DNA of 64,000 nucleotides, taken from the IMG/VR virus record IMGVR_UViG_3300032268_000986, positions 248,001 to 312,000 of that record. One strand, 5' to 3'. Positions within the stretch are counted from its first letter, which is position 1. Every line of letters begins with the position of its first letter. The notes beneath the pieces are model-generated. The model worked only from the letters and a program-made list of their open reading frames with translations. It did not search any database and was not told the origin of the DNA. Below, one piece after another: positions 7,206 through 50,015 of the stretch. Made by a program: the position numbers and the translations under genes.

Positions 7206-7206
7206 G

Positions 7207-7494
7207 TTAGCCTACGTTTACTGTGCCACTGCCAGATGATCTGGCATGACCACATGTGTCTGAATTGCCGTCCACATTGATGGCAATACCTCCGGCCTTG
7301 ACTGACCCAACACCACCAGAGGTCACTGCACTGCAATGCACTGGTGGACACCCACGACGTCCACAGCAGGGATGCGGTGTCACTGAAGTACCGTCCACAA
7401 CGACTGGGCGATTGTTGACTCTAACCGAGCCAACTCCGCCGCTGGCCACGCCGCCAGCACCGTTGGGATCACCTTGTCGTTGTGCCGCTGGCAT
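7207..7494 (-). CDS. PAAR-motif baseplate spike tip protein (T4 gp5.4-like)
   Basis: N-terminal PAAQRQGD, His/Cys metal-binding residues, DTCGH...GS.TV.VG tail. Confidence 0.85.
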   Translation of the reverse strand: MPAAQRQGDPNGAGGVASGGVGSVRVNNRPVVVDGTSVTPHPCCGRRGCPPVHCSAVTSGGVGSVKAGGIAINVDGNSDTCGHARSSGSGTVNVG

Positions 7495-26270: not shown

Positions 26271-27203
26271 ATGACCAGCGCAATCAACCCCAACAACATC
26301 GACGGTGCTTATCCCATTGCCGGGCAGCCCAACAACACCCAAGGCATGCGGGACAACTTCACCGCCACAAAAACCAATTTTCAGTATGCAGCCGACGAAA
26401 TCACTGACTTGCAGAGCAAGGTTGTGGTTAAATCTGCTCTAACCGGCGGTACTATAGACAACAACATGAATGACAACCTCATTTATGCTGTCAAACTCAA
26501 TGATGTCAGTTACACTTATTTGCAAAATACAGCCACTGCGGGCACAGTCACAATAGACTATTCTGCAGGACAATATCAATTCCTTACAACTACAGGCAGC
26601 GTTTCCCTGAGTTTTGCCAACTGGCCCGTGGCCGGTGATACTGGCAGCGTGGACATTGCTGTGAACATCACCAACACTGCTTACACATTGACCCTGCCCT
26701 CGGCAGTCAGCCTGGGCACCGCCGGAGTTCAAGGCTACAGCGCAAATGTGATCACATTTGCTGCCACTGGCACCTATCAGTTCCGTTTCTCCACAGCCGA
26801 CAGCGGCACCACCATAACCATATTTGATTTGAATCGTCCTTTGTTAGCAGCCGAAGGGCAAACAATTGGATATCAGGGAGCAGCTGGTACAGGCGGCACA
26901 GTAACACAAGCAACCAACAAAGCCACAGGTGTAACGTTAAACAAACCTGTTGGACAAATTACCCTAAACAATGCATCGCTAGCGGCTGCCACTACAGTGA
27001 ATTTTACCTTGACCAATTCCTACATTGGCAACACTGACCTGCTGATAATCAATCAAACCAGCACAGCCAACGCAGGCGGTTACTATTTTAATGCAATATG
27101 TAATGCGGGCAATGCACAAGTGTCTGTGCGCAATATCATGGCAGCATCAGCAAGTGATGCTGTGGTGGTACGTTATGCTGTGGTCAAGGGCGAAATAGCT
27201 TAA
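26271..27203 (+). CDS. putative tail/fibre structural protein
   Basis: N-terminal NN.QG.RDNF..TK.N..YA..EI..LQ; C-terminal GG.VTQAT.K.TGVTLNK.VGQITLNNA.LAA module; Thr/Asn/Gly-rich. Confidence 0.65.
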   Translation: MTSAINPNNIDGAYPIAGQPNNTQGMRDNFTATKTNFQYAADEITDLQSKVVVKSALTGGTIDNNMNDNLIYAVKLNDVSYTYLQNTATAGTVTIDYSAGQYQFLTTTGSVSLSFANWPVAGDTGSVDIAVNITNTAYTLTLPSAVSLGTAGVQGYSANVITFAATGTYQFRFSTADSGTTITIFDLNRPLLAAEGQTIGYQGAAGTGGTVTQATNKATGVTLNKPVGQITLNNASLAAATTVNFTLTNSYIGNTDLLIINQTSTANAGGYYFNAICNAGNAQVSVRNIMAASASDAVVVRYAVVKGEIA

Positions 27204-28642
27204 TTTGATTTGATCTGTCCCAGCAGTTGTTTGAGCTTGGCGCTTTGAACATCTGCTGTTACTTTAGACCCCTGCTCCCATGCAGGGGTTCCTGTGGCAC
27301 GTTCCCAAGGCTGGTTGGCGGTTTCTCCCTCAGTAGCACTGCCTTGGGCAGGTTTTGCACTACTACGTGCCTTGATTGAATCCATGATTGAACTTTGTGG
27401 GCGGTTGGCTTCTTCTCCGCCTTCGTCAGTAATGCGCATTGTTTCAACATTGTACTCCAGATCAATTTTTTGACCAACGCCGGTCGAGCTTCGAGATTTC
27501 ATGCACTGTATCTGATACTTGCCACGTTCACGCATGGCGCGACTTGTAAAGATACCAAACACATTGTCAGCTGTGTTGATTTTACTGATACCACCCGAAA
27601 TGTGCGAGTGATCAAATTCAATCTCTTCCACAGCCGATCGATTCAACTGTGACGCTGTGACCATCAAGATACCCAGCTCTTTGGCCAAGTTACGCAATTC
27701 TTCCGATACATACTTGTCTTTGACAAACAAGTCGTTGGGACTGACCTTGGCACTCACAGGCATCAACAAGTCCAGGTAGTCAATCATCATGAAGTCCACT
27801 CGATGCCCAGTCTTGATCTGATATTCTTTCAAGAAACTGCGAATGTCGTTGATGTTGCTCTGCGCCGGCAAGGCCTTGACTTGATAGCTGCCGGCCTTTT
27901 TGCCCACCAGCTTGATCTTGAGTGCTGCTGTTTCTTTTTCTTTGCGAATGTCCTTGGTTGACATATTGGTCAACATGGCTGCTGTTCTCAAACCTGTGAG
28001 CTCTTCACTCAGTTCCAGAGTGATGTATACACCATGCAAGCCCAGTTGTACCCAGTTCAGGGCAATGTTCATCATCACAAGTGATTTGCCCGAGCCTGAT
28101 CCGCCGGCAAAGATATTGAGTTCACCACGGCTGAATCCGCCGTACAACAGTCGATCCATTTGTGGCCATCCTGTTGATACTTGGCCGCCTGCATCAAAGT
28201 ACCGGGCAAACATGGCTTCAGGATCAAGCCAAAAATCAGTGCCTAGATCCTTGGTCAAACTGATCTGTACAGCATCCTTTATGAGCTTTTCCACTGGATC
28301 AAACTCGCCCTTTTCCAGCAAGTCTGCGGCCTTGAGGATTGCACGTTCAAGCTCTTGGCGCTTGGTAAAGTTTTCAAATTCTTGCAAGAACCACTCGTAG
28401 TGTCCTTCATTCAAGTCTGGCACAGCTTCTAGTTTGACCCCGGTGGCCGCCGAGATCTGTGTGCGTTCAGGCAAGGTCTTGAACTTGTCTGAGTGCTCAA
28501 GAATGAACTTGGCGGCTGGACGTAGGCTGCGATCAAAGTTTTCTGGATTGTAGATGTTTTGAACACGCACATAGCTCTGTGCATCTTCTAGCATCATTTC
28601 TAGAAACAGTTTTTGTACTTCAATTCCGAATTCTTTTAACAA
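27200..28642 (-). CDS. gp41: replicative DnaB-like helicase (T4 gp41-like)
   Basis: Walker A GGSGSGKS, YITLELSE, IDYLDL, TASQLNR, SGGISKINTAD. Confidence 0.93.
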   Translation of the reverse strand: MLKEFGIEVQKLFLEMMLEDAQSYVRVQNIYNPENFDRSLRPAAKFILEHSDKFKTLPERTQISAATGVKLEAVPDLNEGHYEWFLQEFENFTKRQELERAILKAADLLEKGEFDPVEKLIKDAVQISLTKDLGTDFWLDPEAMFARYFDAGGQVSTGWPQMDRLLYGGFSRGELNIFAGGSGSGKSLVMMNIALNWVQLGLHGVYITLELSEELTGLRTAAMLTNMSTKDIRKEKETAALKIKLVGKKAGSYQVKALPAQSNINDIRSFLKEYQIKTGHRVDFMMIDYLDLLMPVSAKVSPNDLFVKDKYVSEELRNLAKELGILMVTASQLNRSAVEEIEFDHSHISGGISKINTADNVFGIFTSRAMRERGKYQIQCMKSRSSTGVGQKIDLEYNVETMRITDEGGEEANRPQSSIMDSIKARSSAKPAQGSATEGETANQPWERATGTPAWEQGSKVTADVQSAKLKQLLGQIKSN

Positions 28643-29349
28643 AGTCTATCCTTTATACTGGTTTCAAAAAAATAACTGTTTCCAGCAGGTCCGTGATGAC
28701 CCATCCATCCGTATTGTTTAAAATCTGCAGGCTCGTGCTTGTTTAAGTTTGTGCTATAGTATGTATTTTCAAACAGTATGCATCGTTTATGTTCTTGGCA
28801 ATATGGCAACACAAAATCGCTTGGTCCCCATTTGTTTTCAGGATCAAATGGTTTTGACAGATTGACAATGAGATAGTTGGCATTTTTTGAATCTAACCAG
28901 GTTGTTAATAAAAACAAAGTTCTCAATGTTTGTGTCTCTAGCCAGGAGCGATCGCTGTGAATAACTAACTGTTTGTCATTTCCGTAATTGTGCTCAGATA
29001 CCAGTCCATGATGACTAGTTATTTTAAATTTATGGTCATCCCATGTATCAGTGTCAAACTTGTAACCAGTGTATTCAGTGTCTTTGAAATTGTCAAATAT
29101 AGTAATTCTTTCCAAAGGAGGAATACCAATCAAGAATACATCTTTGTCCCAGTTATATTGATCTTGCATGCTGATTAACATATGACATACACTGTCAAGA
29201 CTGTTGCCATCTCTTGAGCAATTCTTAATAGCTGGTATCCCAAGATATTGTGCAGCCAATCCCCAGAAACTTTCTTGTGGGGTTACACAGCGATGTGGAG
29301 TGGTGTAACTATCACCAAAAACCCAAAGATTATTGTATTCTTTTGACAA
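28636..29349 (-). CDS. SGNH/GDSL-like hydrolase or acyltransferase
   Basis: VFGDSYT, NCSRDGNS, GHHGPAGN. Confidence 0.7.
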   Translation of the reverse strand: MSKEYNNLWVFGDSYTTPHRCVTPQESFWGLAAQYLGIPAIKNCSRDGNSLDSVCHMLISMQDQYNWDKDVFLIGIPPLERITIFDNFKDTEYTGYKFDTDTWDDHKFKITSHHGLVSEHNYGNDKQLVIHSDRSWLETQTLRTLFLLTTWLDSKNANYLIVNLSKPFDPENKWGPSDFVLPYCQEHKRCILFENTYYSTNLNKHEPADFKQYGWMGHHGPAGNSYFFETSIKDRLC

Positions 29350-30316
29350 GTTGACGTTTCCTTAACTCAATTTTGATACGGCTGGTTTCCCGAGCCTGCA
29401 TGATAGTTAGCAGTGTGGCCAGGCCACCATATTTCTTCACAGCATCGTTGACATCTTTGACATCATTGCCCCAGTCGGGTATGCTCACAGCCCAACCTAG
29501 ATCCAAGGCACGATCAATCAGTGCAACGCCAGCAGCGTCCTGATCTGGTACCACTGTGACTGTGCGGCCCAGACTGCGAATCAATCTGGCCTGTTGATCA
29601 CTGATGTCATTGTGCATCACAGCCAGGCCCTGTATACTGAGTGCATCAAAGATGCCTTCCATGACCAAGACATGTTGCCAGTTGTCCGGCTGTTGGTCTA
29701 TGCCAAACACATATCCGGGCTGAGTGTTGGATATAAATTTAGGCGCCCTCTGATCCAGCATGCGAGCAGTCCAGCCCACTATCTTTCCATCATGAGTGAA
29801 TGGTATGATCACCTGGGGGCGAATCCAATGTATGCCATCATTCTCTTTCACAGTCAATACTGGAAAGTCGTCAGGCACATGTCGGCTGCGTAGATAATTC
29901 CATTCATAAGTGTGTGCCGGAGTAACTGTTTCGGCTCGTGGAGGGAATTCATCAACTTCATCAAACTCAATACCCTGTAGCGAATTTGACACACGCATGC
30001 GATCATCCAAGATACCGTTGATGTTACGATGTCGCATGCTTTCAAGATTTAGCATGTCAATTTCTCGCTCTGGCACACCCATCCAGCCCAAGAGCCTACG
30101 GGCCTTGAAGCTCAACAAGCGGCCAAGGATAAAGCTGGCAGTGTACCCACAATTGAAGCAGTGATAGCTCCAGTTTTGATCAGTTGTTTTGAGTCCGCCA
30201 CGTTGTCGGGCGTCTCGTGAATTACCATTGTGTTCGCAACACACAGCATCAAAGCTGATCCAGCCCGAAGGAGTGGTCTTTTTTCGGGCAGGCAGATATT
30301 CAAGGATGTCTAGCAT
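29330..30316 (-). CDS. gp61: DNA primase (T4 gp61-like)
   Basis: Zn ribbon (CC...HCFNCG), Toprim VMEGIFDA, PDQD, KDVND. Confidence 0.9.
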   Translation of the reverse strand: MLDILEYLPARKKTTPSGWISFDAVCCEHNGNSRDARQRGGLKTTDQNWSYHCFNCGYTASFILGRLLSFKARRLLGWMGVPEREIDMLNLESMRHRNINGILDDRMRVSNSLQGIEFDEVDEFPPRAETVTPAHTYEWNYLRSRHVPDDFPVLTVKENDGIHWIRPQVIIPFTHDGKIVGWTARMLDQRAPKFISNTQPGYVFGIDQQPDNWQHVLVMEGIFDALSIQGLAVMHNDISDQQARLIRSLGRTVTVVPDQDAAGVALIDRALDLGWAVSIPDWGNDVKDVNDAVKKYGGLATLLTIMQARETSRIKIELRKRQLVKRIQ

Positions 30317-30353: not shown

Positions 30354-31427
30354 TTATCGGTATTGTGCGTTGAGTATTAGGCCGTTTGATATTACCACAG
30401 TGGCTGCTGTACCATTGTTGGCAAACTGCAAGGGCAAGTAGCCTGAGCCACCACGAGTCACCGTGATGCCGCTCACTGTACCACCGGCATTGATAGTGGC
30501 CACTGCTTCGGCACCCACACCATTGCCCAGAATTTGAACATAAGGTGGTGCCACATAGTAATTGCCCAAGTTGTTGAGAGAGATGCCAGTGACCACTCCA
30601 TCACTCACAGTGGCACTGGCTGTGGCACCATAGCCAATGGAGTTGTTGAGAGCCAGTCTCAACAGTGGATAATAGCCCGTGATGTTGATGTAATCACTTT
30701 GTGAAGCATCAAGATATTCCTTGAGTTCACTGACATCTGTCCAAACTGCTTCGTAATTTTCAGCGCCTTGCACCTTGACTGTGCCGGTGTAGTGTACCAG
30801 ATCATACTTGACTGTGGTGAAACTGGATTCGTTGCTTTCCATGAAGCTGGAATAAAATTCAGTCATCTGAATTGAGTTAATGGGCTGTGGGTTCAAGGCC
30901 CAGTCTGGCCAACCAGTGGGTGCTGTGCCCACGTACTGATTTTTACCATATAAGTCTGGAATGGTAACTACTTGGCTGGGGACGAATTCAGGCATGATGG
31001 AATCAACAATGTTGACGTCAGCGCGAGCTCCCGAGTTGGCGTCAACATAGGCAGCTTGAACATAGTTGCCGGCTGTGCGTTCAATGCTGTAACTGGCAGG
31101 TTGTGCAGTGATATTGATGGTGTCAGAGGTATCCAAAACTACCTTGACTCGACCAAGACCGGCGCTAAGTATATCCATGGGCTTGGACACAAGAACTTTG
31201 TCTCCAGCTTGACTGATCACTCGAAACACAAAGGTGCTTCCGGTGATGTTGACGGGCTTTTGATCTTGATTGATAAATTCAAACAACAATACGTTGTCAA
31301 CGCCTTTGTTGATGGTGAGTGTTTTTGCGTACACAGGGTCATACCTCGCAGTGAAATAGCCACCACTGGTGTCAATCAATAAAATTCGGGCAATTTGCTG
31401 ATATAAGTATGCAGTGGTAGAATACAT
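30354..31427 (-). CDS. putative baseplate/tail structural protein (BppU-like N-terminus)
   Basis: F.FINQDQKPVNITG; C-terminal A.A.V..G.V..I.......GY repeats; TAAATA at 31446..31451. Confidence 0.6.
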   Translation of the reverse strand: MYSTTAYLYQQIARILLIDTSGGYFTARYDPVYAKTLTINKGVDNVLLFEFINQDQKPVNITGSTFVFRVISQAGDKVLVSKPMDILSAGLGRVKVVLDTSDTINITAQPASYSIERTAGNYVQAAYVDANSGARADVNIVDSIMPEFVPSQVVTIPDLYGKNQYVGTAPTGWPDWALNPQPINSIQMTEFYSSFMESNESSFTTVKYDLVHYTGTVKVQGAENYEAVWTDVSELKEYLDASQSDYINITGYYPLLRLALNNSIGYGATASATVSDGVVTGISLNNLGNYYVAPPYVQILGNGVGAEAVATINAGGTVSGITVTRGGSGYLPLQFANNGTAATVVISNGLILNAQYR

Positions 31428-31450: not shown

Positions 31451-31825
31451 ATGGGCAGTAGCATCTTTGAAACACTAACGGAAAAATATCCGTTTATAAC
31501 CCTGTGCGTGTACGCCAGTGTGGAATACGTGGGCGTGATACAGAACAGAGACGATGCTGTAACCACCATCTACGACTTTGGCACGGTGGTCACACCTGAA
31601 GATAAACTGCTGTTTCTGGAACTGGCTGCTGTTTGGTGGTGGGAGAGCAATCGCAGCATTCCCATCAACATATTCTTGCGTCAGGACTGGGAACCATTTC
31701 GTTACACTTTGCGCACATTTGTCAACAAGGATCTTGACATACTGCACGGACCCATTTGCAGTCTTAGCGACATTGTGCGCAAGAAAAGCAAACGTAAATC
31801 AATCACCCTGGTGCGCAAGCTCTAA
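31451..31825 (+). CDS. conserved hypothetical protein (WWWESNRSIPINIFL motif)
   Basis: Plus-strand ORF filling the gap between converging/diverging genes. Confidence 0.7.
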   Translation: MGSSIFETLTEKYPFITLCVYASVEYVGVIQNRDDAVTTIYDFGTVVTPEDKLLFLELAAVWWWESNRSIPINIFLRQDWEPFRYTLRTFVNKDLDILHGPICSLSDIVRKKSKRKSITLVRKL

Positions 31826-32382
31826 TCCAGAAGATTCATGTGCAGAGCCACCAAGGCAGCATAACTCACTGCATGTGATTTTTTAAACACAAATCCACGG
31901 CTGGCGTCGCCGTCCCACACCGAATCAAACACTTGATCCCAGGGTCGTCCCTGCAGGTGTGCCTTGCCCGGTCTAATAATTGAAATAAAAGCAGCCATTC
32001 TAGGCACAGAATCTGGTCGCATCTGTTTCAACAAATCTGTGTAGTTGCCCACATGCACCAGTTGTTGTGCCCAGGTGGTGTCAGTCCACAATCGTTTCCA
32101 GTCTGGCGATTGACTCAACAGTTGTTCATAGTGATCAACGTCACGTATCTGCTGGTACACACTCATGTTCAACAGATCAATTTTGAAATATCCACGCTGG
32201 TCAGCCGTCTCATAATCCAAGGCCGCACACTCATTAACAGGATCCCAGGGTATGTCAGTGACGTATATGCCCGAGTTGTGTCGTCGTATTGTGCCGTTGG
32301 ATTCCTGGCTGGCCGCGGTGTGGCGAATCAGTGCCAACACACGACTTCGATCAGGAACGTCGATGTCAATATCTGCGCTCAT
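31822..32382 (-). CDS. dnaE: minimal DNA polymerase III alpha (DnaE, family C)-like catalytic core, 186 aa
   Basis: ADIDID (PDxDxD), RHNSGIY (H..G..I), GYFKIDLL (G..KxD.L), FKKSHAVSY (F.KSH..Y). Confidence 0.8.
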   Translation of the reverse strand: MSADIDIDVPDRSRVLALIRHTAASQESNGTIRRHNSGIYVTDIPWDPVNECAALDYETADQRGYFKIDLLNMSVYQQIRDVDHYEQLLSQSPDWKRLWTDTTWAQQLVHVGNYTDLLKQMRPDSVPRMAAFISIIRPGKAHLQGRPWDQVFDSVWDGDASRGFVFKKSHAVSYAALVALHMNLLD

Positions 32383-32726
32383 TTTACATCACACAATGCC
32401 ACAGCAATACGCACAGCATCCTCTGCACGATCTCTAGCCAGCAAGGCATCTGCCACAGTGGGATGTTTTTTTGCCAACTCATTCATCTTCTTTTCTTCTT
32501 CCATTTTCTGTCGTACCCACTGAATGGCTTCTTGAGTTACACCGTCAAGTTCAATCTGTGGTATACTTGCACTCAACATCAACCATGAACTGCCGTCATA
32601 CACTTCCATGCTTGATCCATTGCATCGAACCATACCTGCACTAGGGCGGCTCATGTCAACATAAGGTGTACTGTAACTGTTGCCGGCAATGTGTATGCCC
32701 AGACCTTGTGTGATGTTTCTAATCAT
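32379..32726 (-). CDS. hypothetical protein (115 aa)
   Basis: ORF coupled to the mini-DnaE start. Confidence 0.7.
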   Translation of the reverse strand: MIRNITQGLGIHIAGNSYSTPYVDMSRPSAGMVRCNGSSMEVYDGSSWLMLSASIPQIELDGVTQEAIQWVRQKMEEEKKMNELAKKHPTVADALLARDRAEDAVRIAVALCDVK

Positions 32727-32727
32727 G

Positions 32728-33402
32728 TCACCATCCTGCTTTCTTTAAAAGATCCTTGGTCCATTCCTGGTCGGCCATGTAGTTGCGAAACTTGGTTTGC
32801 CAGCGATCTGAGTCAATGTAAGGCCAGATCATGGCAATTTGTTCTGAATTGAGTTGGCTTAGAAACTCTTGGCCGGACTCTGAATTGTAAATGCACCAAG
32901 CACTGAGTCTACCAGCCACTATGTCATGACACAGGGCATTGTGGTTGCCATATCTCAACATGTCGTGACTGGGATGTGTGGTGTGTTCTTGCCAGGCCAA
33001 GCTGAGGTTCAGAGCACGTTCCAATGCATCTTGTGGTGCTTCCAGCAACAGATAATCCAACAAGTATTCAGTGTACAACTTGTCACTGCACCAGTTGTCA
33101 ATTTTTTTCTGTGCTCGCAACAACCATATCAAAAATTGCGAGGGATTGATCACTCGGGTGTTAACACAGTATCTTCCCCATTTCACAAATGCTCGATAGT
33201 AGGGCGAGTCCGCAAAGTCTTCAAACGTTTTGTTACGAGCCGATCCCTGCATGGTTTCATAAAACTTTACATAGGCCTGGAACCCCAAGCGAACACCTGC
33301 TTCGTGCTGTTCCAGTCGGCGTCGTTTGGGTTCACACATGTGAACAGCAACCGAACTTTCTTTAAAAAATTCTTTTTTGCAAAACTCACACGTATAATTC
33401 AT
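32728..33402 (-). CDS. hypothetical protein with N-terminal zinc finger
   Basis: YTCEFCKKEF......VHMC. Confidence 0.7.
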   Translation of the reverse strand: MNYTCEFCKKEFFKESSVAVHMCEPKRRRLEQHEAGVRLGFQAYVKFYETMQGSARNKTFEDFADSPYYRAFVKWGRYCVNTRVINPSQFLIWLLRAQKKIDNWCSDKLYTEYLLDYLLLEAPQDALERALNLSLAWQEHTTHPSHDMLRYGNHNALCHDIVAGRLSAWCIYNSESGQEFLSQLNSEQIAMIWPYIDSDRWQTKFRNYMADQEWTKDLLKKAGW

Positions 33403-34121
33403 TCTAGTATTGTATTACGTTTGATATAGTCTGTCAAGTATTCATTGACCCGGCCATGATGTCCAGGTCTACGATGGCGAAACTCCGGTGGGGGAGGAGG
33501 ATCATTGCGTATGGCCGATTGTGGTACGCCTTGTTGATGTTGCCAGTGAACAGCCGGCCAACGATACCGATCAACAAACAGCACGGGGTCACCAAAAATG
33601 TCCAATCGAGGATCTTCCAGATGCTGCAACATTTCTTGTTCGGGTTGATCGCTTATCTGCCGAAACACCAACAATCGATGTCCGTACGGTTCTAACAACA
33701 GCCTCAACGACAACAATTGATAACTCAAATGTTCCAGCATGTCCAACATACCATACACATGAGCGTCAAAATTTAGATCCGCCCATTCATGAGTTTTTTC
33801 CTGCGTCCAAGGACCTAGATATTTTTCTTGATGTCTTGATTGTGGATTGATCCAGGTGCCTTCAAATTTATCATCAGACGGGGACACTGGTATTTCCCAA
33901 CGATTCATAAAGCTCATGCCCAGCAAGTAAAACGACGGTCGGCGATTGTTCTGATGTGCATGCTTGGCAGTGGTTCTTATGATTCTTGAATTGCAACTAC
34001 CCCCCAGGGCCAGATTTTCACATGATTGCATGCCCAGACGATCAACTAGGTCATGAGCCCCGCCACCACTGGCATACACATCCATGTAACTGCATCCATT
34101 GACTACCAAATGCTTTATCAT
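33399..34121 (-). CDS. SGNH/GDSL-like protein
   Basis: VNGCSYM, NLALGGSCN.RI, C-terminal His motif HRRPGHH. Confidence 0.65.
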   Translation of the reverse strand: MIKHLVVNGCSYMDVYASGGGAHDLVDRLGMQSCENLALGGSCNSRIIRTTAKHAHQNNRRPSFYLLGMSFMNRWEIPVSPSDDKFEGTWINPQSRHQEKYLGPWTQEKTHEWADLNFDAHVYGMLDMLEHLSYQLLSLRLLLEPYGHRLLVFRQISDQPEQEMLQHLEDPRLDIFGDPVLFVDRYRWPAVHWQHQQGVPQSAIRNDPPPPPEFRHRRPGHHGRVNEYLTDYIKRNTILE

Positions 34122-34561
34122 TTGACATCTCGTCCCAATTGTCGATCGTGATCGTCCAGGTCTTTGGTAGAAACCACAGTCATCATGACATCCAGTTCGT
34201 CATCTCGATAAGTGGGATACAACTCCTGTAGACGCTTTCGTTTGGCACCGGCTCCGGCTTCTTTTTTCTTGGGCGCAACCCAGTTGTGCTTCATTGCCCC
34301 CAAGCCCGGGCTCACGGCAGTGGCACACAACCACTGCAATTTGGGGTGCCGGCCAATTGTGAAGAAGTGTTTGTTCAAGTAGTGGTTACAACTTTGCACA
34401 TAGTACTCTTGCAACTCCTGAGCACCGTCCACACAACTACCCCAACGGATCATGAGAAAAGTACTGAACTTCTTGAGCTCTTCTGTGGTAAGACTGTTGT
34501 AGAACTCTCGGTTCTTGACGTCCAGTTGACGCATCTCGTTGTGTATTGATAGCTTATCCAT
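34118..34561 (-). CDS. probable clamp-loader small subunit (T4 gp62-like); start probably MDKLS at 34561
   Basis: Size, position in the replication module, F.MIRW.S...N..LN.H...HPKLQW...W.APKK pattern. Confidence 0.55.
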   Translation of the reverse strand: MDKLSIHNEMRQLDVKNREFYNSLTTEELKKFSTFLMIRWGSCVDGAQELQEYYVQSCNHYLNKHFFTIGRHPKLQWLCATAVSPGLGAMKHNWVAPKKKEAGAGAKRKRLQELYPTYRDDELDVMMTVVSTKDLDDHDRQLGRDVK

Positions 34562-35612
34562 ACTTGAAAATTTTCCTATAGACCTGTTGTTGGACTGGCA
34601 AATGTTGAAACCATCCCTCACCCCGGGTGTGATCCATCATGAGCTGGCGTGCTGTGAACTTCCACCAGGCCTGAGTATTGTCCACTGTGCGCAGTACATC
34701 AATAGCTCGATCAATGTTGACATGCCGATGTGGTGCTGTTTCCAACTTGGCAATCAAATTGTCTCGAAATTCCCAGGGAATCAAGCCCAGTCCCTCTGCA
34801 CCATCAGGATTGGCCAATACTGGTTGGAACGCATGTTCCGTGACCTGTTGCTGTGAAAGATAGTCAAACAATTGATCTATCCACCAAACATTAATGGCAC
34901 TGATCACTGGTGCATAGGATAATTGTACATAAGATTGTGATTTACACCAAGCAATATTTTCTTCAATTTGACTCCATTTGGTGCCACTGCGAACTATTTC
35001 GGCAATCTCTCCCACGGCATCAATGCTGGCATTGACATTGATATACTTGAACTTGGACCAGTAGTCTTTCACGTGTTTGTTCTTGTAGCCCAACACAGTC
35101 ATATTGGTGCTGTACATCACACGAGGTTGCACCCGAGCTGCAATCAATTTTTCCAACAGCTGATAGTGCTGTGGATTCAGCAGTGGTTCACCGCCGGCAA
35201 AATACACCTGTTGACAATGACTCAAGTCAATGTCGCCCAATTCAACTTCTTCGTGTAAATGAATCACCTGTTGACCCAGTTCACTGGCCCAGCTGGTGCT
35301 GAATCCTGGACCACAACTGCGACATTTCAAATTGCAGAGATTGTTGTTTCTAAAATCCAAGAAGTGAACCTGCAAGTTGGTCAAGTCAGTGGGATAGTGC
35401 TGAAACATCTTACGCCAGCCTTCTCGCTCAGGTGGGCATGAGTTCATGCACTCCTGAGGAATTTCACCTCGCAAAAAAGCACCGCCTACTACGTCACGAA
35501 CCTGTTCAGGACTGTCAAAGTGATCGCCGCCCCAGCTGCAACAGGGTGTGAACTTGCCGCCAGGCATGTAGGTGACTGCGGTCCATGGAGCCTTGCAATA
35601 GATTTCACTCAT
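34554..35612 (-). CDS. radical SAM enzyme with N-terminal twitch-like Cys cluster
   Basis: CKAPW...PCC, CNLKCRSC, AGGEPL, YSTN.T, ASIDAVG..AEIVRSG. Confidence 0.9.
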   Translation of the reverse strand: MSEIYCKAPWTAVTYMPGGKFTPCCSWGGDHFDSPEQVRDVVGGAFLRGEIPQECMNSCPPEREGWRKMFQHYPTDLTNLQVHFLDFRNNNLCNLKCRSCGPGFSTSWASELGQQVIHLHEEVELGDIDLSHCQQVYFAGGEPLLNPQHYQLLEKLIAARVQPRVMYSTNMTVLGYKNKHVKDYWSKFKYINVNASIDAVGEIAEIVRSGTKWSQIEENIAWCKSQSYVQLSYAPVISAINVWWIDQLFDYLSQQQVTEHAFQPVLANPDGAEGLGLIPWEFRDNLIAKLETAPHRHVNIDRAIDVLRTVDNTQAWWKFTARQLMMDHTRGEGWFQHLPVQQQVYRKIFKYG

Positions 35613-36364: not shown

Positions 36365-37834
36365 TTACTTGATGATCATCCATTCCAGTTTTTCCTGGGT
36401 GAATGGATAATTTGCTTCGCGATAAAACTGCTTGCGCTTGGTAAGATGTCGCTTGGCAAATTTGCATGTAGAGGTGATGTCCCAGATCTCCACATGGTCT
36501 TTGTCTTCGGCCTTTCTAATGCCTCGTCCAATACTTTGTATAACTCTAACAAAACTCTTGCCAGGTTCTACCAGTACTAGATTAAAGATACGGGGTATAT
36601 TGATGCCCACAGCAGCCACGCCGTATGTGGCCACAATGATTTTGTCTGTTGCATCGGCCACTGCATCGTATTCGGCCTGGCGCTTGGTTCCCTTGGTGGC
36701 GCCTGACACAAACACCGCCCGGTCGCCCAGCCGCTCGACCAGTTGACGACCGCATTCAGTTCGATCAACCAAGACCAGGGTGTTGCCAGTTTCATTCACT
36801 CGAGTGACCAAGGCCGCCATGGTGTCCAAGCGCCCGGACTCTTCCAACAAGTATTTGAGTTCGCTTTGATAGTCTTTGTACTCCACATGGTCAACCAACT
36901 GTACAATGTTCACATGACAGTTGGCCAGTACACCACGATCCTGTAGCTCACTTGCAGCCAGGCGGCTCACCACTGGTCCTAAACTTACCAACAATGCCTG
37001 ACTTTCAAACTTTTCCTTGGGCACAGTTCCAGTCAACCCCCAACGAATCGGCACTCTTGACAACACCCCGGCCAACAAGGTCTTGAGCGCATCAGCCTTG
37101 GCCATGTGTACTTCGTCTACAATTACACAGCAAACATCCTCAATAAAGTCATGTATGGTAAAGTTGGCTAAACCGCTTTGTGTGGTTTTCATCAAGTTGT
37201 TGAGACTCTGCCAGGTACAGATGGTGTGCTTTTTGCCCAGGTCTTTGCGGTCGCCAAAGTAAACACCCACGTCTAGCCCCAAGTTCACGTAGTCTTTCTC
37301 AGTCTGTGTCACAAGGCTTTTGTTGGGCACAATCACAAGACTGCGGCCATAGGGCTCAATGCTGGCACTCATGGCCGCTGTCATTAGGGTTTTGCCGGCG
37401 CCTGTGGCCACTTCCTGAATGCACTGTGGGTTCTCTAAGAAGTTGTTGATGATTTCAATTTGATAATCACGCAACATCACAGGCTCACCGGCTGCTGGGT
37501 GTCCTGGGGGCCAGGTCTTGTGTGAGAACGAGTGTTCCTCAAACGGAGAGAACTCAAATTGTATGGAATAATCTCTCTGATCATCCAGCTCAATGTCATA
37601 ACCATAGTGTTCTAGAATAGGCACAACCTCGGGCAGTAAGTTCACATAGGTTGATCCGCCCAATTGAAAATATGCTACCTTGCCATCCCAGCGGCCTAGC
37701 CTCACAGCCGGCAGATATCGTGCAGCCGGATTCTCATACTTGAATGTGTTCACTAGCTTTTTGCGAACGTCAAGGTCAAGTCCTTCGACTTTGATATTGA
37801 CTTCGTCTCGAATAATTATGGTTGCAGTTTTCAT
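36365..37834 (-). CDS. uvsW: UvsW-like SF2 DNA helicase
   Basis: LRDYQ, ATGAGKT, IVDEVH, GLTGT, ATYGVAAVGINIP, QSIGRGIR. Confidence 0.93.
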   Translation of the reverse strand: MKTATIIIRDEVNIKVEGLDLDVRKKLVNTFKYENPAARYLPAVRLGRWDGKVAYFQLGGSTYVNLLPEVVPILEHYGYDIELDDQRDYSIQFEFSPFEEHSFSHKTWPPGHPAAGEPVMLRDYQIEIINNFLENPQCIQEVATGAGKTLMTAAMSASIEPYGRSLVIVPNKSLVTQTEKDYVNLGLDVGVYFGDRKDLGKKHTICTWQSLNNLMKTTQSGLANFTIHDFIEDVCCVIVDEVHMAKADALKTLLAGVLSRVPIRWGLTGTVPKEKFESQALLVSLGPVVSRLAASELQDRGVLANCHVNIVQLVDHVEYKDYQSELKYLLEESGRLDTMAALVTRVNETGNTLVLVDRTECGRQLVERLGDRAVFVSGATKGTKRQAEYDAVADATDKIIVATYGVAAVGINIPRIFNLVLVEPGKSFVRVIQSIGRGIRKAEDKDHVEIWDITSTCKFAKRHLTKRKQFYREANYPFTQEKLEWMIIK

Positions 37835-39816: not shown

Positions 39817-40554
39817 CTATTTCCACAAGTTTTTTATCAGCGGGTCACTGACTTGATGTGGCTTGGGAGTTCCGTGAAACACAATGACCGAAGCTTCAGG
39901 GTCAATCACAGCACCTGCACCGGGTTTGCTGAATGTGCGTGACGGAAATTGCATGCCACCGTCCTGTACCTGCCAGCGATAACTTTGCACATGTTTTTCA
40001 GGATAGAAGCGGCGTTTGTTGTGATCAATTACTGCACCAATGTAGTCTTGGTCCCCGGCATGTCGACGCATGACATCTTCAAGGTTCTCGCCGCGAAACT
40101 TTTGCCACACCCAGTCAAACTGAACTGTGTTCCAGTACATGAGACTGCTGTTCATGCCCGAATACCCAGTGCGTTGTAGATATCTAAAATCACGCAAGGT
40201 CCAAAAATAATCAGTATGGCCAGCTGTGGCCCAGGTCATGTCATTGAATACCACAACATCTAGGTCTAAATACAACAGAGGTCCTTGCCAGTGCTCACTG
40301 TTGAACAACTGCATCTTGTACCACCAGGACTTTTTGGGACCAGACACGCCGGCCCAGTCTTCTAATATGTGTTTGATCATGTGTGGTGGTACTGATCGGT
40401 CATGTTCAGTGTACACATGCATGCGGGCACCACCTGGCAGCTGTCGGTTCAACATGCTGTGCAGTCGTTCCACATACTGCCAGTCGTATCCTGACCCGTG
40501 TATCACACAGGCACACTCGGTTACTCTAGGGCTGGTGCCAATCTTTTTAGCCAT
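39817..40554 (-). CDS. GT-A glycosyltransferase (GT8-like)
   Basis: WWYKMQLF, YLDLDVV (DxD), NSSLM, GDQDYI, IVFHG.PKP. Confidence 0.8.
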   Translation of the reverse strand: MAKKIGTSPRVTECACVIHGSGYDWQYVERLHSMLNRQLPGGARMHVYTEHDRSVPPHMIKHILEDWAGVSGPKKSWWYKMQLFNSEHWQGPLLYLDLDVVVFNDMTWATAGHTDYFWTLRDFRYLQRTGYSGMNSSLMYWNTVQFDWVWQKFRGENLEDVMRRHAGDQDYIGAVIDHNKRRFYPEKHVQSYRWQVQDGGMQFPSRTFSKPGAGAVIDPEASVIVFHGTPKPHQVSDPLIKNLWK

Positions 40555-42181: not shown

Positions 42182-42978
42182 CCTGGATATTTCTCAACAA
42201 GAAAAACAGTGACGAGTACATAGAAATGTTTGCTCGTGGATGCAGTGCAGTGCCCACTGAGTTAGAAACCTGGCAGTACCAAGACAGTGATGCGCCCTTG
42301 GTGATCCGAGGCATCATGAAACACAAGATTATCAAACAGTGCTGGGCAGACAACCGACCATTCTGGTACATGGATTCCGGCTATGTTGGCAATAGACCCA
42401 GTACTCAAAATCCTCATGGTTGGAAACAGTGGCATAGGATAGTGCCCAACAACCTGCAACATGGTGCAGTGATCCCAAGGCCTGCTGATCGTTGGCAGCG
42501 GCATGACATTGCCATGCCTCGACGTCGGCATGGCAGCAAAATATTACTAGCAGCACCAGACGAAAAACCCTGTGTGTTTTATGACATCACTCTGTCTGAC
42601 TGGATTGCACAAACCGTTGCCACAATCAAACAATACACTGACCGAGAAATTGTCATACGTGAGCGCAACCCCAATCGCCAGGCACGTGTGGCCAGTGACT
42701 TGCAATCAGCACTGATGGATGTGCATGCCGTGGTCACATTTAATTCTATTGCAGCCACCGAAAGTGTGCTGGCTGGTGTGCCGGCATTTGCTCTGGCACC
42801 GTCAAATGCTGCCATTCCAGTGTCCAACACTGACTTATCCAAAATCAACAACCCATGGTACCCTGATCGAGATCAAATTCATGATTGGGCGTGCCATTTG
42901 GCCTATGGGCAGTTTCACAATTCTGAACTGCAGAATGGCACAGCGCACCGAATACTACAGGAGACTCTCAATGCGTGA
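42178..42978 (+). CDS. KpsS/KpsC-like GT-B protein
   Basis: YMDSGY, IVIRER, HAVVTFNSIAATESVLAGVP, WACHLAYGQF. Confidence 0.6.
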   Translation: MTWIFLNKKNSDEYIEMFARGCSAVPTELETWQYQDSDAPLVIRGIMKHKIIKQCWADNRPFWYMDSGYVGNRPSTQNPHGWKQWHRIVPNNLQHGAVIPRPADRWQRHDIAMPRRRHGSKILLAAPDEKPCVFYDITLSDWIAQTVATIKQYTDREIVIRERNPNRQARVASDLQSALMDVHAVVTFNSIAATESVLAGVPAFALAPSNAAIPVSNTDLSKINNPWYPDRDQIHDWACHLAYGQFHNSELQNGTAHRILQETLNA

Positions 42979-43621
42979 ACACTATGGCTGGTATTTCCCA
43001 GATGTTGACACACACTTTCCACAAATGCTAAAGAAAAGTGTTGATCGCGGTGGCCCCGCAGAATATCAATTACCTGTGCGCCGTCGCAGTATTGAATTGT
43101 GTGCTGGACATGGCACTGCCTTGGACATTGGAGCCAATGTGGGCCTGTGGAGTCGTGACCTAGTGGACAACTTTTCCCAGGTGATTGCGTTTGAGCCCGT
43201 GGCCATCTTTAGAGAATGTCTGGAACGCAATGTGTCTGGCTCTAACTTTTCTATCAGCCCCTTGGCTCTGGGAAATCAAGAAACTCAGGCCACCATGATC
43301 ATCACTCCAGGCAATACTGGACACAGTCACCTGGATCCTGCCAGCATGGGCACCGGTGATGTGAAAGTGGTGACTCTTGACAGCTTGAACATACCCAATG
43401 TTGACTATGTCAAGATTGACTGCGAAGGGTACGAGTATCGTGTGTTGCAAGGTGCAGAACAAACCATTAAAACCTGTCGTCCTGTTGTGGTAGTGGAACA
43501 AAAACCGCATGCAGCCTACAGTGATCAATACGCACAGCATGCAGCCGTCGAGTTGCTGAAATCCTGGGGCATGACCCGGCTGGACCAAGTCAAGGATGAC
43601 TGGATCATGGGATGGAACTGA
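42971..43621 (+). CDS. FkbM-family SAM methyltransferase; start probably MREHY at 42971
   Basis: ALDIGANVGLW, FEPV, ALG, VKIDCEGYE..VLQGA. Confidence 0.88.
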   Translation: MREHYGWYFPDVDTHFPQMLKKSVDRGGPAEYQLPVRRRSIELCAGHGTALDIGANVGLWSRDLVDNFSQVIAFEPVAIFRECLERNVSGSNFSISPLALGNQETQATMIITPGNTGHSHLDPASMGTGDVKVVTLDSLNIPNVDYVKIDCEGYEYRVLQGAEQTIKTCRPVVVVEQKPHAAYSDQYAQHAAVELLKSWGMTRLDQVKDDWIMGWN

Positions 43622-48960: not shown

Positions 48961-50015
48961 TATTCTTCCTCAACGTCAACAACAGGTGTGGCATCCTTTT
49001 GATTGCCAAAATCTTTCATCACAGTGTCAAGACAGCCGTCAGTATTGGCTTCCCATGCCTTGCGAAACTTCTTGATGATCTCGCCATCGCTTGTGGTAAA
49101 CACTAGACTGTTGCCTTCGCGTTTGAGCAGGCCTTTTTTCTCAATCAAGTCCACAAGACCTGAGTAAGGGCTCATGCCTGTTTCATAAGGAATCTTGACT
49201 TGCACTCCCTCGAACGGCTTGGCATAGCGTGTTTTCATTACTTTACAGCCAGCACGAATACCAGTTACATCTGAAATCTTGTTGCCGTCTTCGTCCTCTT
49301 TGAGTTTCATCTTCTTCATGGCCACCACAATTGAGCTGGCGTAAATGAAACCTTGACCACCTGAAATCTTGTCGTCTGGATCAAACATGTCTTGACTGGC
49401 GTATGTGTGATTGGTACAAACCAGGCCCACGTTGTAACTACCAAACATGTTGACACAGTTACGCACCAAGGCGGTAAGAGCTTTGGGCTTGCGACCTAGG
49501 TCACCTTTCATTTCGCCTGCATCAAATTGATTCACATCAGTGGGTGTCAGCAACATGCCCAGGCTGTCAATTACAAACATGACCTTGGGTCGCTCGGCAG
49601 GATCAAGAGCTTTGTAGTCGCTCATGAATGTAGAGATAGTTTTAGCTACATCGTCAATCATGGCCATTGACAATTTGAGTAACTTGCTGTCACTGGTATC
49701 AACTCCCAGGGCCTTGAGCCAGTCTTCGTCCAAGGCATTTTCGCTGTCAATCAACACTACAAAGATGCCTTGCTGTTGTGCATGTTTGATAATGTTGCCA
49801 CTACAGATGTAACTTTTACCTGCGCCCGAGTCACCGGCAAACACCGTGACCTTGCCCAAGGGGATACCTCGATCAAAGTCTCCTGAGATCAAGTAGTTCA
49901 AAGCATAGTTGCCTGTGGAGATCCAGTCTGTGGGATCATTGAATCCAATCGACAATCCGTCGATACTTTTTGTAATTTCCTTGCGGAATTTTGATACGTC
50001 AAATGGTTTAGCCAT
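48960..50015 (-). CDS. uvsX: RecA/UvsX recombinase
   Basis: STGNYALN, GDSGAGKS, IDSEN, VIDSLG, TNHTY, SGG.G..YASS. Confidence 0.95.
   Translation of the reverse strand: MAKPFDVSKFRKEITKSIDGLSIGFNDPTDWISTGNYALNYLISGDFDRGIPLGKVTVFAGDSGAGKSYICSGNIIKHAQQQGIFVVLIDSENALDEDWLKALGVDTSDSKLLKLSMAMIDDVAKTISTFMSDYKALDPAERPKVMFVIDSLGMLLTPTDVNQFDAGEMKGDLGRKPKALTALVRNCVNMFGSYNVGLVCTNHTYASQDMFDPDDKISGGQGFIYASSIVVAMKKMKLKEDEDGNKISDVTGIRAGCKVMKTRYAKPFEGVQVKIPYETGMSPYSGLVDLIEKKGLLKREGNSLVFTTSDGEIIKKFRKAWEANTDGCLDTVMKDFGNQKDATPVVDVEEE

What the first reader, a model, noticed from the sequence alone, without database searches (positions are those of the whole stretch)
31822..32382. 186-aa minimal family C (DnaE-like) polymerase core inside a T4-type replisome module
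All DnaE palm hallmarks are compressed into 186 aa: DIDID (D6/D8, equivalent to E. coli D401/D403), HNSG, KID69LL (equivalent to D555) and FKKSHAVSY. The protein starts at the DxD motif and has no PHP, OB or clamp-binding domain; cellular DnaE is over 1000 aa. It sits among helicase, primase and gp62-like genes, whereas T4-type replisomes normally use family B gp43. The intact catalytic Asps and open frame argue against a decaying pseudogene. Inference: a split polymerase subunit, or a repurposed primer-extension/nucleotidyltransferase enzyme.
Basis: partly seen in the sequence, partly recalled or inferred. Interest (0 to 1): 0.75.

Follow-up and report, generated by a model that had tools for sequence, protein, structure and literature searches.

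The report
Half of a split mini-DnaE polymerase
This 186-residue gene is the metal- and template-binding half of a two-gene, stripped-down relative of the bacterial replicative polymerase DnaE, a class first described by sequence analysis in 2021 in one group of giant phages, where it sits beside an ordinary T4-type polymerase and has never been tested at the bench.

Summary
The ORF is real: window 31822..32382 on the minus strand, 186 aa. It is DnaE-like. Its family profile matches only Pol III alpha in the PDB (E 7e-6), and an AlphaFold model (pLDDT 96) aligns over its whole length with E. coli DnaE 399-776, Taq 460-833 and PolC 970-1291 (Z 8-9.7; next unrelated fold Z 3.8).

It is not a complete core. 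The nucleotide-binding GS loop lies on a second 176-aa protein encoded about 89 kb away in the same 343-kb phage genome. That protein ends exactly where this one begins.

- The two halves co-occur in the same groups of isolated phages, judged by parallel counts.
- They are predicted to bind (0.92 against 0.27 for the best control).
- They are naturally fused in a rare 375-aa variant.
- Both are under purifying selection (dN/dS about 0.08 and 0.21).

The genome also has a full 888-aa family B polymerase and a clamp loader. The catalytic pair is D4/D6, not D6/D8. The thumb, most of the index finger, PHP, clamp-binding and OB parts are absent.

Iyer et al. 2021 (PMC7824862) already described this split minimal Pol III alpha in group 2.2 jumbo phages, so this is a new freshwater member of a known, biochemically untested kind.

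The parts
31822..32382 (-). C-terminal half of the split minimal Pol III alpha (186 aa). It carries the Mg-binding Asps D4, D6 and D69, the primer-phosphate Lys K67, the template-contact motif R137-P138-G139, and the base-stacking/steric-gate motif F164..F166-K167-K168-S169-H170.
   Evidence: phrog_11778 E 1.9e-54. Profile against the PDB hits only DnaE. AF2 pLDDT 96.4. Foldseek top 19 and VIA top 16 matches are all family C polymerases, Z up to 9.7. Residue conservation counts are. dN/dS 0.08.
32379..32726 (-). Upstream 115-aa ORF whose stop overlaps the start of the C half (ATGA). It occupies a variable slot and is probably not part of the enzyme.
   Evidence: No Pfam or PHROG hit. A homologue is found in only 37 of 83 related loci. 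A contig of a related strain has about 900 nt of other sequence at this slot (X5 record 14).
32728..33402 (-). Conserved upstream C2H2 zinc-finger protein (224 aa, phrog_11058). It is a candidate accessory factor and is untested.
   Evidence: phrog_11058 E 4.8e-49. It lies upstream of the C half in 76 of 83 loci, including Phosso and the PA5oct-like phage PAC2. It is found in 90 phage records. Its Atlas neighbours are a phage-only family.
31451..31825 (+). Conserved convergent 124-aa gene (phrog_11637) whose stop overlaps the C half's stop by 4 nt. Function unknown.
   Evidence: phrog_11637 E 1.8e-29. It is adjacent and convergent in 82 of 83 loci, including the locus of the fused variant. It is found in 89 phage records, and is adjacent to the C half in those whose coordinates I compared.
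29330..30316 (-). Context: DNA primase.
   Evidence: phrog_47 E 4.6e-31. The same order is seen in Phosso and PAC2.
27200..28642 (-). Context: DnaB-like replicative helicase.
   Evidence: phrog_19 E 7.4e-67.
36365..37834 (-). Context: UvsW-like helicase at the head of the same minus-strand gene run.
   Evidence: phrog_16 E 9.2e-72. PAC2 annotates 'DNA helicase UvsW' in the same relative place.

Best explanation
The gene encodes the C-terminal half of a heterodimeric, minimal family C (Pol III alpha / DnaE-like) nucleotidyltransferase.

Its partner is a 176-aa protein encoded outside the window, at genome C1:190386-190916 on the minus strand, 88.9 kb upstream. The partner supplies the first part of the Pol-beta-like palm, including the invariant G-R145-G146-S147-S GS loop that holds the incoming nucleotide. 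It ends at ...EEFLR, which corresponds to E. coli ...ERFLN393. The C half starts three residues before the first catalytic Asp.

Together the two halves rebuild one active site:
- N half: GS loop.
- C half: D4/D6/D69 for the two metals.
- C half: K67 on the primer's last phosphate.
- C half: R137-P138-G139 at the templating base.
- C half: F/Y164 stacking on the incoming base.
- C half: H170 as the steric gate against ribonucleotides.

Shown here: homology, fold, the exact complementarity of the split site, co-occurrence, a natural fusion, a predicted interface through the active-site elements, and purifying selection.

Inferred: the pair is an active, template-directed, dNTP-using DNA polymerase. 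It probably has low intrinsic processivity, because it has no thumb, most of the index finger is missing, and it has no clamp-binding, OB or PHP part. It would work as an auxiliary enzyme (primer extension, one strand, or repair/recombination-dependent synthesis) beside the phage's own family B replicase. It does not replace that replicase.
For: Identity and fold:
- phrog_11778 E 1.9e-54.
- A family profile of 84 diverse sequences hits only DnaE chains in the PDB (E. coli 6.8e-6, Taq 1.1e-5, M. tuberculosis 3.9e-5), in register at KxD, RPG and FNKSH.
- The AF2 model has pLDDT 96.4.
- The Foldseek top 19 matches are all family C polymerases.
- VIA gives Z 8.2-9.7 for residues 1-186 against E. 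coli 399-776, Taq 460-833 and PolC 970-1291; the next fold scores Z 3.8.

Partner:
- PF07733 finds a second piece in the same genome (33.6 bits in the genome scan, 34.1 on the ORF, cut-off 23.9, model positions 20-95) in a 176-aa ORF.
- That ORF matches phrog_11127 at E 2.3e-40.
- Its residues 67-176 align only with family C palms, E. coli 271-387.

The two halves belong together:
- In the isolated-phage collection the two halves show near-identical counts by host genus (C half in 96 records; N-half query in 110, which also picks up phages with a full-length DnaE). Both were seen directly in five isolates, which also carry PolB, and on two IMG/VR contigs.
- The N halves of five diverse phages all end at EF[LFS] plus 1-3 further residues.
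- Natural 375-376-aa fusions exist (P0288, P0391, P0392). Their N part is homologous to our N half (E 1e-21). One of them, P0392, was located, and it lies in the C-half gene context.
- Complex prediction scores 0.92 against 0.27 for the best of 3 controls. That mark was reached by 58 of 80 solved complexes and 2 of 110 mismatched pairs. The interface runs through N 137-150 and 173-176, and through C 2-10, 63-73 and 167-170.

Constraint:
- D4, D6, K67, D69 and P138 are 83/83 invariant. H170 and H35 are 82/83, R137 is 81/83. The N-half GRGSS is 28/28.
- dN/dS is 0.08 for the C half and 0.21 for the N half.
- Each half has more than 7,900 clusters at 90% identity in metagenomes.

Residue roles are taken from the E. 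coli ternary complex (bioRxiv 10.64898/2026.06.29.735100).

Prior description: Iyer et al. 2021, PMC7824862.
Against: - No biochemical or genetic test of any member was found in the searched literature.
- The enzyme lacks the thumb. There are 63 residues between the D401 and K553 equivalents, against 152 in E. coli.
- It lacks the index-finger segment that carries R709, R710, K714 and K715, which contact the dNTP. There are 24 residues between the RPG and Y754 equivalents, against about 112 in E. coli.
- The E. coli R390 position aligns with an invariant Glu, E173, in the N half.
- Substrate binding may therefore differ from DnaE, and polymerase activity is not assured.
- The complex score could partly reflect the model's memory of intact DnaE structures (caveat stated).
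- The one lake metatranscriptome that holds this region covers only the neighbouring structural gene. It says nothing about expression of this gene.
Confidence: 0.8

Rival explanations
1. The two halves do form one Pol-beta-like nucleotidyltransferase, but it is not a template-copying DNA polymerase. It could instead be a terminal transferase, a primer- or end-tailing enzyme, an RNA or mixed polymerase, or the maker of a nucleotide signal or DNA modification.
For: [quoted passage not shown] R390 is replaced by an invariant Glu. A complete family B replicase is already present. The wider Pol-beta NTase superfamily has many non-polymerase members (general knowledge).
Against: The residues that are specific to templated dNTP use in Pol III are kept. 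These are the RPG template contact (R137 81/83, P138 83/83), the stacking aromatic residue at 164 (Y or F in 64/83), the steric-gate His170 (82/83) and the primer-phosphate Lys67 (83/83). Both genes sit in replisome gene clusters, one by primase and helicase, the other by the clamp loader.
Confidence: 0.12
2. The 186-aa protein is a self-sufficient minimal polymerase, that works alone or as a homo-oligomer.
For: All three metal-binding Asps and the finger motifs are on this chain. It folds confidently on its own, pLDDT 96.
Against: It lacks the GS loop and the first half of the palm, which contact the incoming nucleotide in Pol III. That half exists as a separate gene that co-occurs with it and is under selection. 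It is fused to this half in rare variants. A high-confidence interface is predicted.
Confidence: 0.03
3. The two ORFs are decaying fragments of a captured bacterial dnaE gene, or they are non-catalytic proteins that only bind or decoy replisome parts.
For: The pieces are short and scattered compared with the roughly 1160-aa cellular enzyme. No PHP, finger (PF17657) or HhH (PF14579) domains were detected anywhere in the genome.
Against: dN/dS is 0.08 and 0.21. The catalytic residues are invariant across 83 representatives that share about 28-60% identity with the query. The split point and lengths are the same in phages of Alpha- and Gammaproteobacteria and in freshwater metagenomes. Thousands of intact copies exist.
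Confidence: 0.04

Closest known systems
Split minimal DNA polymerase III alpha of group 2.2 jumbo phages (Iyer, Anantharaman, Krishnan, Burroughs & Aravind 2021, Viruses 13:63, PMC7824862). Corresponds to PHROG families phrog_11778 (C half) and phrog_11127 (N half).
   Same: It has two stand-alone proteins from distant genes: an N-terminal NTP-binding half and a C-terminal Mg- and template-binding half. It has no other Pol III domains. It sits beside a family B polymerase and a T4-like helicase, primase and clamp-loader set. The isolated phages that carry homologues of both halves (PA5oct-type, RaK2/121Q-type, Atu_ph07, XacN1) are of the kind the paper assigns to group 2.2; the paper names Atu_ph07 there.
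   Different: Nothing essential differs. This copy comes from an uncultivated 343-kb freshwater phage and is 28-41% identical to the copies in isolated phages. Added here: a natural fused form, the complex prediction, selection estimates, residue-level mapping, the conserved flanking genes, and presence in a 142-kb phage that is not a jumbo phage (Slickus01).
Cellular DnaE / Pol III alpha (E. coli 2HNH and 5FKU, Taq 2HPI and 3E0D, M. tuberculosis DnaE1 5LEW) and PolC (3F2B)
   Same: It shares the Pol-beta-like palm with the GS loop, the DxD pair plus a third Asp, the KxD Lys, the RPG motif and the FxKSH helix-loop-helix. The full-length structural alignment of the C half scores Z 8-9.7, and N-half residues 67-176 score Z 4.5-7.5.
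   Different: About 296 aligned residues stand in for E. coli 271-776. There is no PHP domain and no thumb. The index finger is reduced to about 24 residues. The outer fingers, the beta-clamp-binding, OB and tau-binding parts are absent. The chain is broken between the equivalents of N393 and S398. Sequence similarity is detectable only with profiles.
Intein-split DnaE of cyanobacteria (dnaE-n / dnaE-c, joined by protein trans-splicing; from general knowledge)
   Same: A DnaE encoded by two distant genes.
   Different: Here there is no room for intein fragments. The N half ends at the residue aligned to E. coli 392-393, and the C half begins 3 residues before the D401 equivalent. The split lies inside the palm rather than in the fingers. 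The halves are expected to associate non-covalently.
Other phage-encoded DnaE-like polymerases (phrog_405 full length; phrog_13169 of 463 positions and phrog_11165 of 782 positions; Iyer's group 3.2 phages such as Bacillus phage G)
   Same: They are family C palm homologues carried by phages.
   Different: Those keep PHP and the full fingers and act as the main replicase. Matches to them are only weak and local (E 1e-9 to 7e-4).

Membership tests
Family C DNA polymerase catalytic core (DnaE/PolC) | Pol-beta-like palm with three metal-binding Asps (E. coli D401, D403, D555) | tested here: met
   D4 and D6 align to Taq D463 and D465, and D69 to Taq D618. All three are 83/83 invariant. The fold aligns with DnaE and PolC at Z 8-9.7.
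Family C DNA polymerase catalytic core (DnaE/PolC) | GS (R-G-S) nucleotide-binding loop on the same polypeptide | tested here: not met
   It is absent from the 186-aa protein. It is present as G144-R145-G146-S147-S148 (28/28) on the separate 176-aa N half at C1:190386-190916.
Family C DNA polymerase catalytic core (DnaE/PolC) | N-terminal PHP domain | tested here: not met
   PF02811 finds nothing in the 343-kb genome at E<=10, while the control rings in 14 of 14 genomes.
Family C DNA polymerase catalytic core (DnaE/PolC) | Thumb and full fingers (index, middle, ring, little) | tested here: not met
   There are 63 residues between the D401 and K553 equivalents against 152 in E. coli, and 24 against about 112 between RPG and Y754. 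The structural match ends at E. coli 776. PF17657 gives no hit. Only the RPG and FKKSH elements are kept.
Family C DNA polymerase catalytic core (DnaE/PolC) | Beta-clamp-binding, (HhH)2 and OB C-terminal parts | tested here: not met
   The protein ends 16 residues after the KSH motif. PF14579 gives no hit in the genome. No clamp-binding motif was looked for beyond this.
Family C DNA polymerase catalytic core (DnaE/PolC) | Template-directed DNA polymerase activity | not testable with these tools
Split minimal Pol III alpha of group 2.2 jumbo phages (Iyer et al. 2021) | Two stand-alone proteins, N (NTP-binding) and C (Mg/template-binding), encoded by distant genes | tested here: met
   The N half is at C1:190386-190916 and the C half at C1:279822-280382, 88.9 kb apart. 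They match phrog_11127 and phrog_11778.
Split minimal Pol III alpha of group 2.2 jumbo phages (Iyer et al. 2021) | Accompanied by a family B polymerase and T4-like replisome genes, with no other Pol III domains | tested here: met
   An 888-aa PolB matches phrog_262 at E 1.5e-193, and a clamp loader matches phrog_168. DnaB, primase, UvsW and UvsX are present. There are no PHP, finger or HhH domains. PolB is present in 5 of 5 isolated phages checked.
Split minimal Pol III alpha of group 2.2 jumbo phages (Iyer et al. 2021) | Homology to the copies in phages of the kind assigned to group 2.2 (RaK2/121Q-type, PA5oct-type, Atu_ph07, XacN1) | tested here: met
   tblastn gives 28-41% identity over 92-99% of the length in nearly all of the 96 records with a match. 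Flanking genes are conserved. Only Atu_ph07 is named under group 2.2 in the passages I read.
Split minimal Pol III alpha of group 2.2 jumbo phages (Iyer et al. 2021) | The halves reconstitute one enzyme | tested here: inconclusive
   This is supported by prediction only: score 0.92 against 0.27 for the best control, natural fusions and co-occurrence. Physical association has not been measured.
Intein-split DnaE (trans-splicing) | Split-intein fragments at the junction | tested here: not met
   The N half ends, and the C half begins, within a few residues of the aligned DnaE junction, so no extra sequence is available.

The most novel reading that the evidence does not exclude
The two-gene mini Pol III may be only the catalytic heart of a larger phage-specific machine. 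The conserved flanking proteins are the C2H2 zinc-finger protein phrog_11058 (upstream) and the convergent phrog_11637 protein. They, and/or the 66-residue N-terminal extension of the N half, might replace the missing thumb, index finger and clamp tether. This would give a dedicated primer-extension or recombination-dependent polymerase. Its assembly would depend on genes in two different replisome clusters, one by primase and helicase and one by the clamp loader. If so, it would be a simplified or ancestral-like architecture for family C polymerases that could be studied at the bench.
Probability: 0.15. Interest if true: 0.65.

Novelty: new member of a known kind. Interest (0 to 1): 0.38.

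Why it matters
Family C polymerases are the replicases of bacteria. Every solved family C structure matched in these searches is a large multidomain enzyme of roughly 900-1,200 residues.

A conserved two-piece version of about 360 residues is extremely abundant: more than 7,900 clusters at 90% identity for each half in public metagenomes. It keeps only the active-site elements. That makes it a natural minimal system for asking what a Pol III-type active site needs in order to work, and why a phage with a good family B replicase keeps a second, unrelated polymerase.

The idea itself is published, so this window adds no new category. It shows that the system extends to a very common freshwater phage lineage and to at least one phage of 142 kb. 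It also adds support for the two-halves model: a natural fusion, a predicted interface, evidence of selection and a residue map.

Tried and rejected
- Pfam on the C half alone gives no hit. Single-sequence phmmer against the PDB is not significant, although it is in the correct register. Profiles were needed.
- Megablast of the 11-kb neighbourhood against isolated phages finds nothing.
- I built a combined alignment of fused, N-half and C-half rows in order to fold the fused protein P0288. MAFFT laid the N halves onto the C region, so I dropped it. It gave pLDDT 78, with the GS loop and the C-terminus poorly defined without the partner.
I re-sent it only with the window's and genome's own proteins and proteins from the protein searches.
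- A pseudogene reading was rejected on dN/dS and invariant residues.
- An intein-mediated split was rejected on sequence arithmetic.
- The idea that neighbour 32379..32726 is the missing piece was rejected. It is a variable ORF without homology to DnaE.
- gp62 (PF16790) and the gp45 C-terminal domain (PF09116) give no hit in the genome.
- Expression: the only RNA run holding this region covers just the structural gene at 30568-31400, so it is uninformative for this gene.
- Atlas look-ups of the two conserved neighbours gave only phage families of unknown function.
- Literature searches for experimental work on the split enzyme found none.
Full report
**1. What is at the coordinates**

Window 31822..32382 holds one intact ORF of 186 aa on the minus strand (MSADIDIDVPDR ... 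FKKSHAVSYAALVALHMNLLD). Its ATG overlaps the stop of the upstream ORF 32379..32726 as ATGA. Its stop overlaps, tail to tail, the stop of a convergent gene at 31451..31825.

The window is bases 248001-312000 of a 342,865-bp IMG/VR virus record that CheckV estimates to be 99% complete. Near-identical DNA occurs in lake and other freshwater metagenomes.

**2. Is it DnaE-like?**

Yes.
- Pfam alone sees nothing. PHROGs places the whole protein in phrog_11778 'DNA polymerase' (E 1.9e-54), with a weak local match to the full-length DnaE-type family phrog_405.
- A search of 1.84 billion representatives found 346 clusters at 50% identity. Nearly all full-length members are about 180-215 aa.
- A profile of 84 diverse members hits only Pol III alpha chains in the PDB: E. 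coli 6.8e-6, Taq 1.1e-5, M. tuberculosis DnaE1 3.9e-5. The hits are in register at the DxD strand, K-x-D, RPG and FNKSH.
- The AlphaFold2 model is very confident, pLDDT 96.4. Foldseek's top 19 PDB matches are all family C polymerases.
- VIA-align places residues 1-186 on E. coli DnaE 399-776, Taq 460-833, M. tuberculosis DnaE1 418-803 and PolC 970-1291 at Z 8.2-9.7. The first unrelated fold scores Z 3.8.

**3.

The HMM alignment to Taq (S460-M-P-D463-I-D465-T-D467) puts the catalytic pair on D4 and D6, not D6 and D8. D69 corresponds to Taq D618.

In 83 representatives that share about 28-60% identity with the query, conservation is as follows:

| Residue | Conserved in |
|---|---|
| D4, D6, K67, D69, P138 | 83/83 |
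| H35, H170 | 82/83 |
| D8, R137 | 81/83 |
| K167 | 77/83, plus 5 R |
| Position 164 | Y or F in 64/83 |

I used the residue roles reported for the E. coli ternary complex (bioRxiv 10.64898/2026.06.29.735100). The correspondences below rest on the alignments.

| E. coli residue(s) | Role | Phage equivalent |
|---|---|---|
| K553 | Contacts the primer's last phosphate; K553A is dead | K67 |
| R639/P640/G641 | Contact the templating base | R137/P138/G139 |
| Y754 | Stacks on the incoming base | F164 |
| H760 | Steric gate against rNTPs | H170 |

**4. It is only half of the core**

- The GS loop (E. coli R362-G363-S364) and the first part of the palm are missing from this protein.
- A scan of the phage's own genome with PF07733 found a second piece at C1:190389-190616.
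- The ORF there (C1:190386-190916, minus strand, 176 aa) ends ...GVGRGSSTASYVLYLLGVHRIDSMYYDLDPEEFLR.
- It passes Pfam's cut-off (34.1 against 23.9 bits, model positions 20-94) and matches phrog_11127 'DNA polymerase' at E 2.3e-40.
- Its residues 106-175 align to E. coli 323-392. In the model of this half (pLDDT 78), residues 67-176 align only with family C palms, E. coli 271-387, at Z 4.5-7.5.
- So the N half stops at the equivalent of E. coli N393, and the C half starts at the equivalent of S398, three residues before D401.
- The N halves of five diverse isolated phages all end at EF[LFS] plus 1-3 further residues. GRGSS is 28/28 invariant.

**5. Evidence that the halves work together**

(a) Co-occurrence.
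- tblastn finds the C half in 96 isolated-phage records. The N-half query matches 110 records; the excess includes phages with a full-length DnaE. The counts by host genus are nearly the same: Escherichia 34/34, Pseudomonas 11/11, Salmonella 8/8, Erwinia 8/8.
- Both halves are on the same IMG/VR contigs where these are long enough, for example 3300025435_001056 and 3300028392_000034.
- All five isolates checked directly have the N half and a family B polymerase.

(b) Rosetta-stone fusion. P0288, P0391 and P0392 (375-376 aa, 78-81% identical to each other, from different sources) carry both halves in one chain, joined by a short linker. Their N part matches our N half at E 1e-21. The one that was located, P0392, sits in the usual C-half context, followed by the convergent phrog_11637 gene and a structural gene.

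(c) Complex prediction. The score is 0.92 in three runs, against 0.27 for the best of three controls. That mark was reached by 58 of 80 solved complexes and 2 of 110 mismatched pairs in the tool's calibration. The interface runs through the N-half GS loop (137-150) and C-terminus (173-176), and through the C-half DxD strand (2-10), the K-x-D region (63-73) and KKSH (167-170). This supports binding but does not prove it, and memory of intact DnaE structures may contribute.

(d) Selection. Pairwise Nei-Gojobori dN/dS has a median of 0.08 for the C half (293 pairs with dS 0.05-1.5). It is 0.21 for the N half (115 pairs, with dS near saturation). Each half has more than 7,900 clusters at 90% identity in metagenomes.

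**6. What is absent**

- PHP, the PF17657 finger domain, the HhH domain and family A polymerase give no hit anywhere in the genome.
- There are 63 residues between the D401 and K553 equivalents against 152 in E. coli, which leaves no room for the 78-residue thumb.
- There are 24 residues between RPG and the Y754 equivalent against about 112 in E. coli. The index-finger segment with R709, R710, K714 and K715 is therefore gone.
- The chain ends at the equivalent of about E. coli 776.
- The E. coli R390 position aligns with an invariant Glu (E173). The C-terminal residue 176 is R or K in 27 of 28 sequences.
- The first 66 or so residues of the N half have no DnaE counterpart, and they touch the C half in the predicted complex.

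**7. Genomic setting**

- The genome has its own 888-aa family B polymerase (phrog_262, E 1.5e-193) and a gp44-like clamp loader. The clamp loader lies 0.9 kb downstream of the N half, next to a GroES-like gene, as in RaK2 and XacN1.
- The C half lies in a minus-strand run: UvsW-like helicase ... C2H2 protein - variable ORF - C half. A convergent gene, a structural gene, the primase and the DnaB-like helicase follow. A UvsX-like recombinase is further on.
- The same order is seen in Phosso and in the PA5oct-like phage PAC2.
- So the mini enzyme accompanies a T4-type replisome and does not replace its polymerase. A gp62-like gene could not be verified.

**8. Comparison with what is known**

This is the system that Iyer et al. 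2021 (Viruses 13:63, PMC7824862) described in group 2.2 jumbo phages. [quoted passage not shown] They found it beside a family B polymerase and proposed that it helps with one strand or with repair.

PHROGs and several GenBank and RefSeq records already label both pieces 'DNA polymerase' or 'DnaE-like'. I found no experimental follow-up.

All features of that class that could be tested are met. Membership of 'DnaE proper' fails on architecture: PHP, thumb, full fingers, the C-terminal domains, and the GS loop in cis.

**9. Mechanism and confidence**

- That this is the C half of the split mini Pol III: about 0.9.
- That the pair is an active, templated, dNTP-using DNA polymerase: about 0.55-0.6. 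This rests on the retained template-contact, stacking and steric-gate residues, and is tempered by the missing thumb and index finger.
- The main rival is another nucleotidyltransferase chemistry, at about 0.12.
- The stand-alone, pseudogene and non-catalytic readings are unlikely.

**10. Verdict**

The feature is real and biologically striking, but the category has been known since 2021. This is a new, environmentally abundant member. Added here are the corrected catalytic assignment, the location of the partner gene, a natural fusion, a predicted composite active site, selection estimates and two conserved flanking genes worth testing.

Noticed in passing
window 31451..31825 (+): A 124-aa gene of unknown function (phrog_11637) lies convergent to the C half, with the two stop codons overlapping by 4 nt. 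It holds this position in 82 of 83 related loci, in 89 isolated-phage records, and next to the naturally fused variant.
   Followed up: partly
window 32728..33402 (-): A phage-specific C2H2 zinc-finger protein (phrog_11058, 224 aa) is conserved just upstream of the C half in 76 of 83 loci and is found in 90 isolated-phage records. It might be a DNA-binding accessory of the thumb-less enzyme. This is untested.
   Followed up: partly
window 32379..32726 (-): The slot between the C2H2 gene and the C half is variable. This 115-aa ORF has homologues in only 37 of 83 loci. A contig of a related strain (run X5, record 14) carries about 900 nt of different sequence exactly at 32379/32382.
   Followed up: partly
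P0288, P0391, P0392; locus L093 519..1649: Rare natural fusions of the N and C halves into one 375-376-aa protein. The linker (DNKEGIYNIA) takes the place of E. coli's NPERVSMP.
   Followed up: yes
genome C1:189731-190129 and C1:188567-189490 (L176 7731..8129 and 6567..7490, minus strand): The N half is followed by a GroES/gp31-like co-chaperonin (Cpn10, phrog_931) and a gp44-like clamp loader (phrog_168). The same order is seen in RaK2; in XacN1 the clamp loader follows the N half, and in PA5oct a 'chaperonin' does.
   Followed up: partly
Alishewanella phage Slickus01, OQ508957.1 (L087, L092): A 142-kb phage, which is not a jumbo phage, carries both mini Pol III halves about 11 kb apart. Its family B polymerase lies in two adjacent ORFs (578 and 322 aa). 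In the PA5oct-like phage PAC2 the PolB matches are also spread over two frames about 2.5 kb apart.
   Followed up: no
window 34554..35612 (-) and 50008..51606 (-): Two radical-SAM-like proteins (phrog_14086 / phrog_1802) lie among the replication and recombination genes. A glycosyltransferase (39817..40554) and a methyltransferase (42719..43621) are also there. Together they may form a DNA- or nucleotide-modification set.
   Followed up: no
window 28636..29349 (-) and 33399..34121 (-): Two ORFs with no family hit lie among the replisome genes: 237 aa beginning ...VFGDSYTTP (GDSL/SGNH-like motif), and 240 aa. The first overlaps both the primase gene and the helicase gene.
   Followed up: no
window 30568..31400: A lake-water metatranscriptome (run X20) holds contigs that are at least 95% identical, and only over the 357-aa structural gene (30354..31427). 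DNA runs from several freshwater studies cover the whole stretch with many synonymous-looking differences. The phage lineage is therefore widespread in lakes.
   Followed up: partly
N half residues 1-66 (genome C1:190719-190916): The N-terminal third of the N half has no counterpart in DnaE. It has only a weak match to the SMF/DprA SAM domain (PF25317, E 0.008), yet it contacts the C half in the predicted complex.
   Followed up: no
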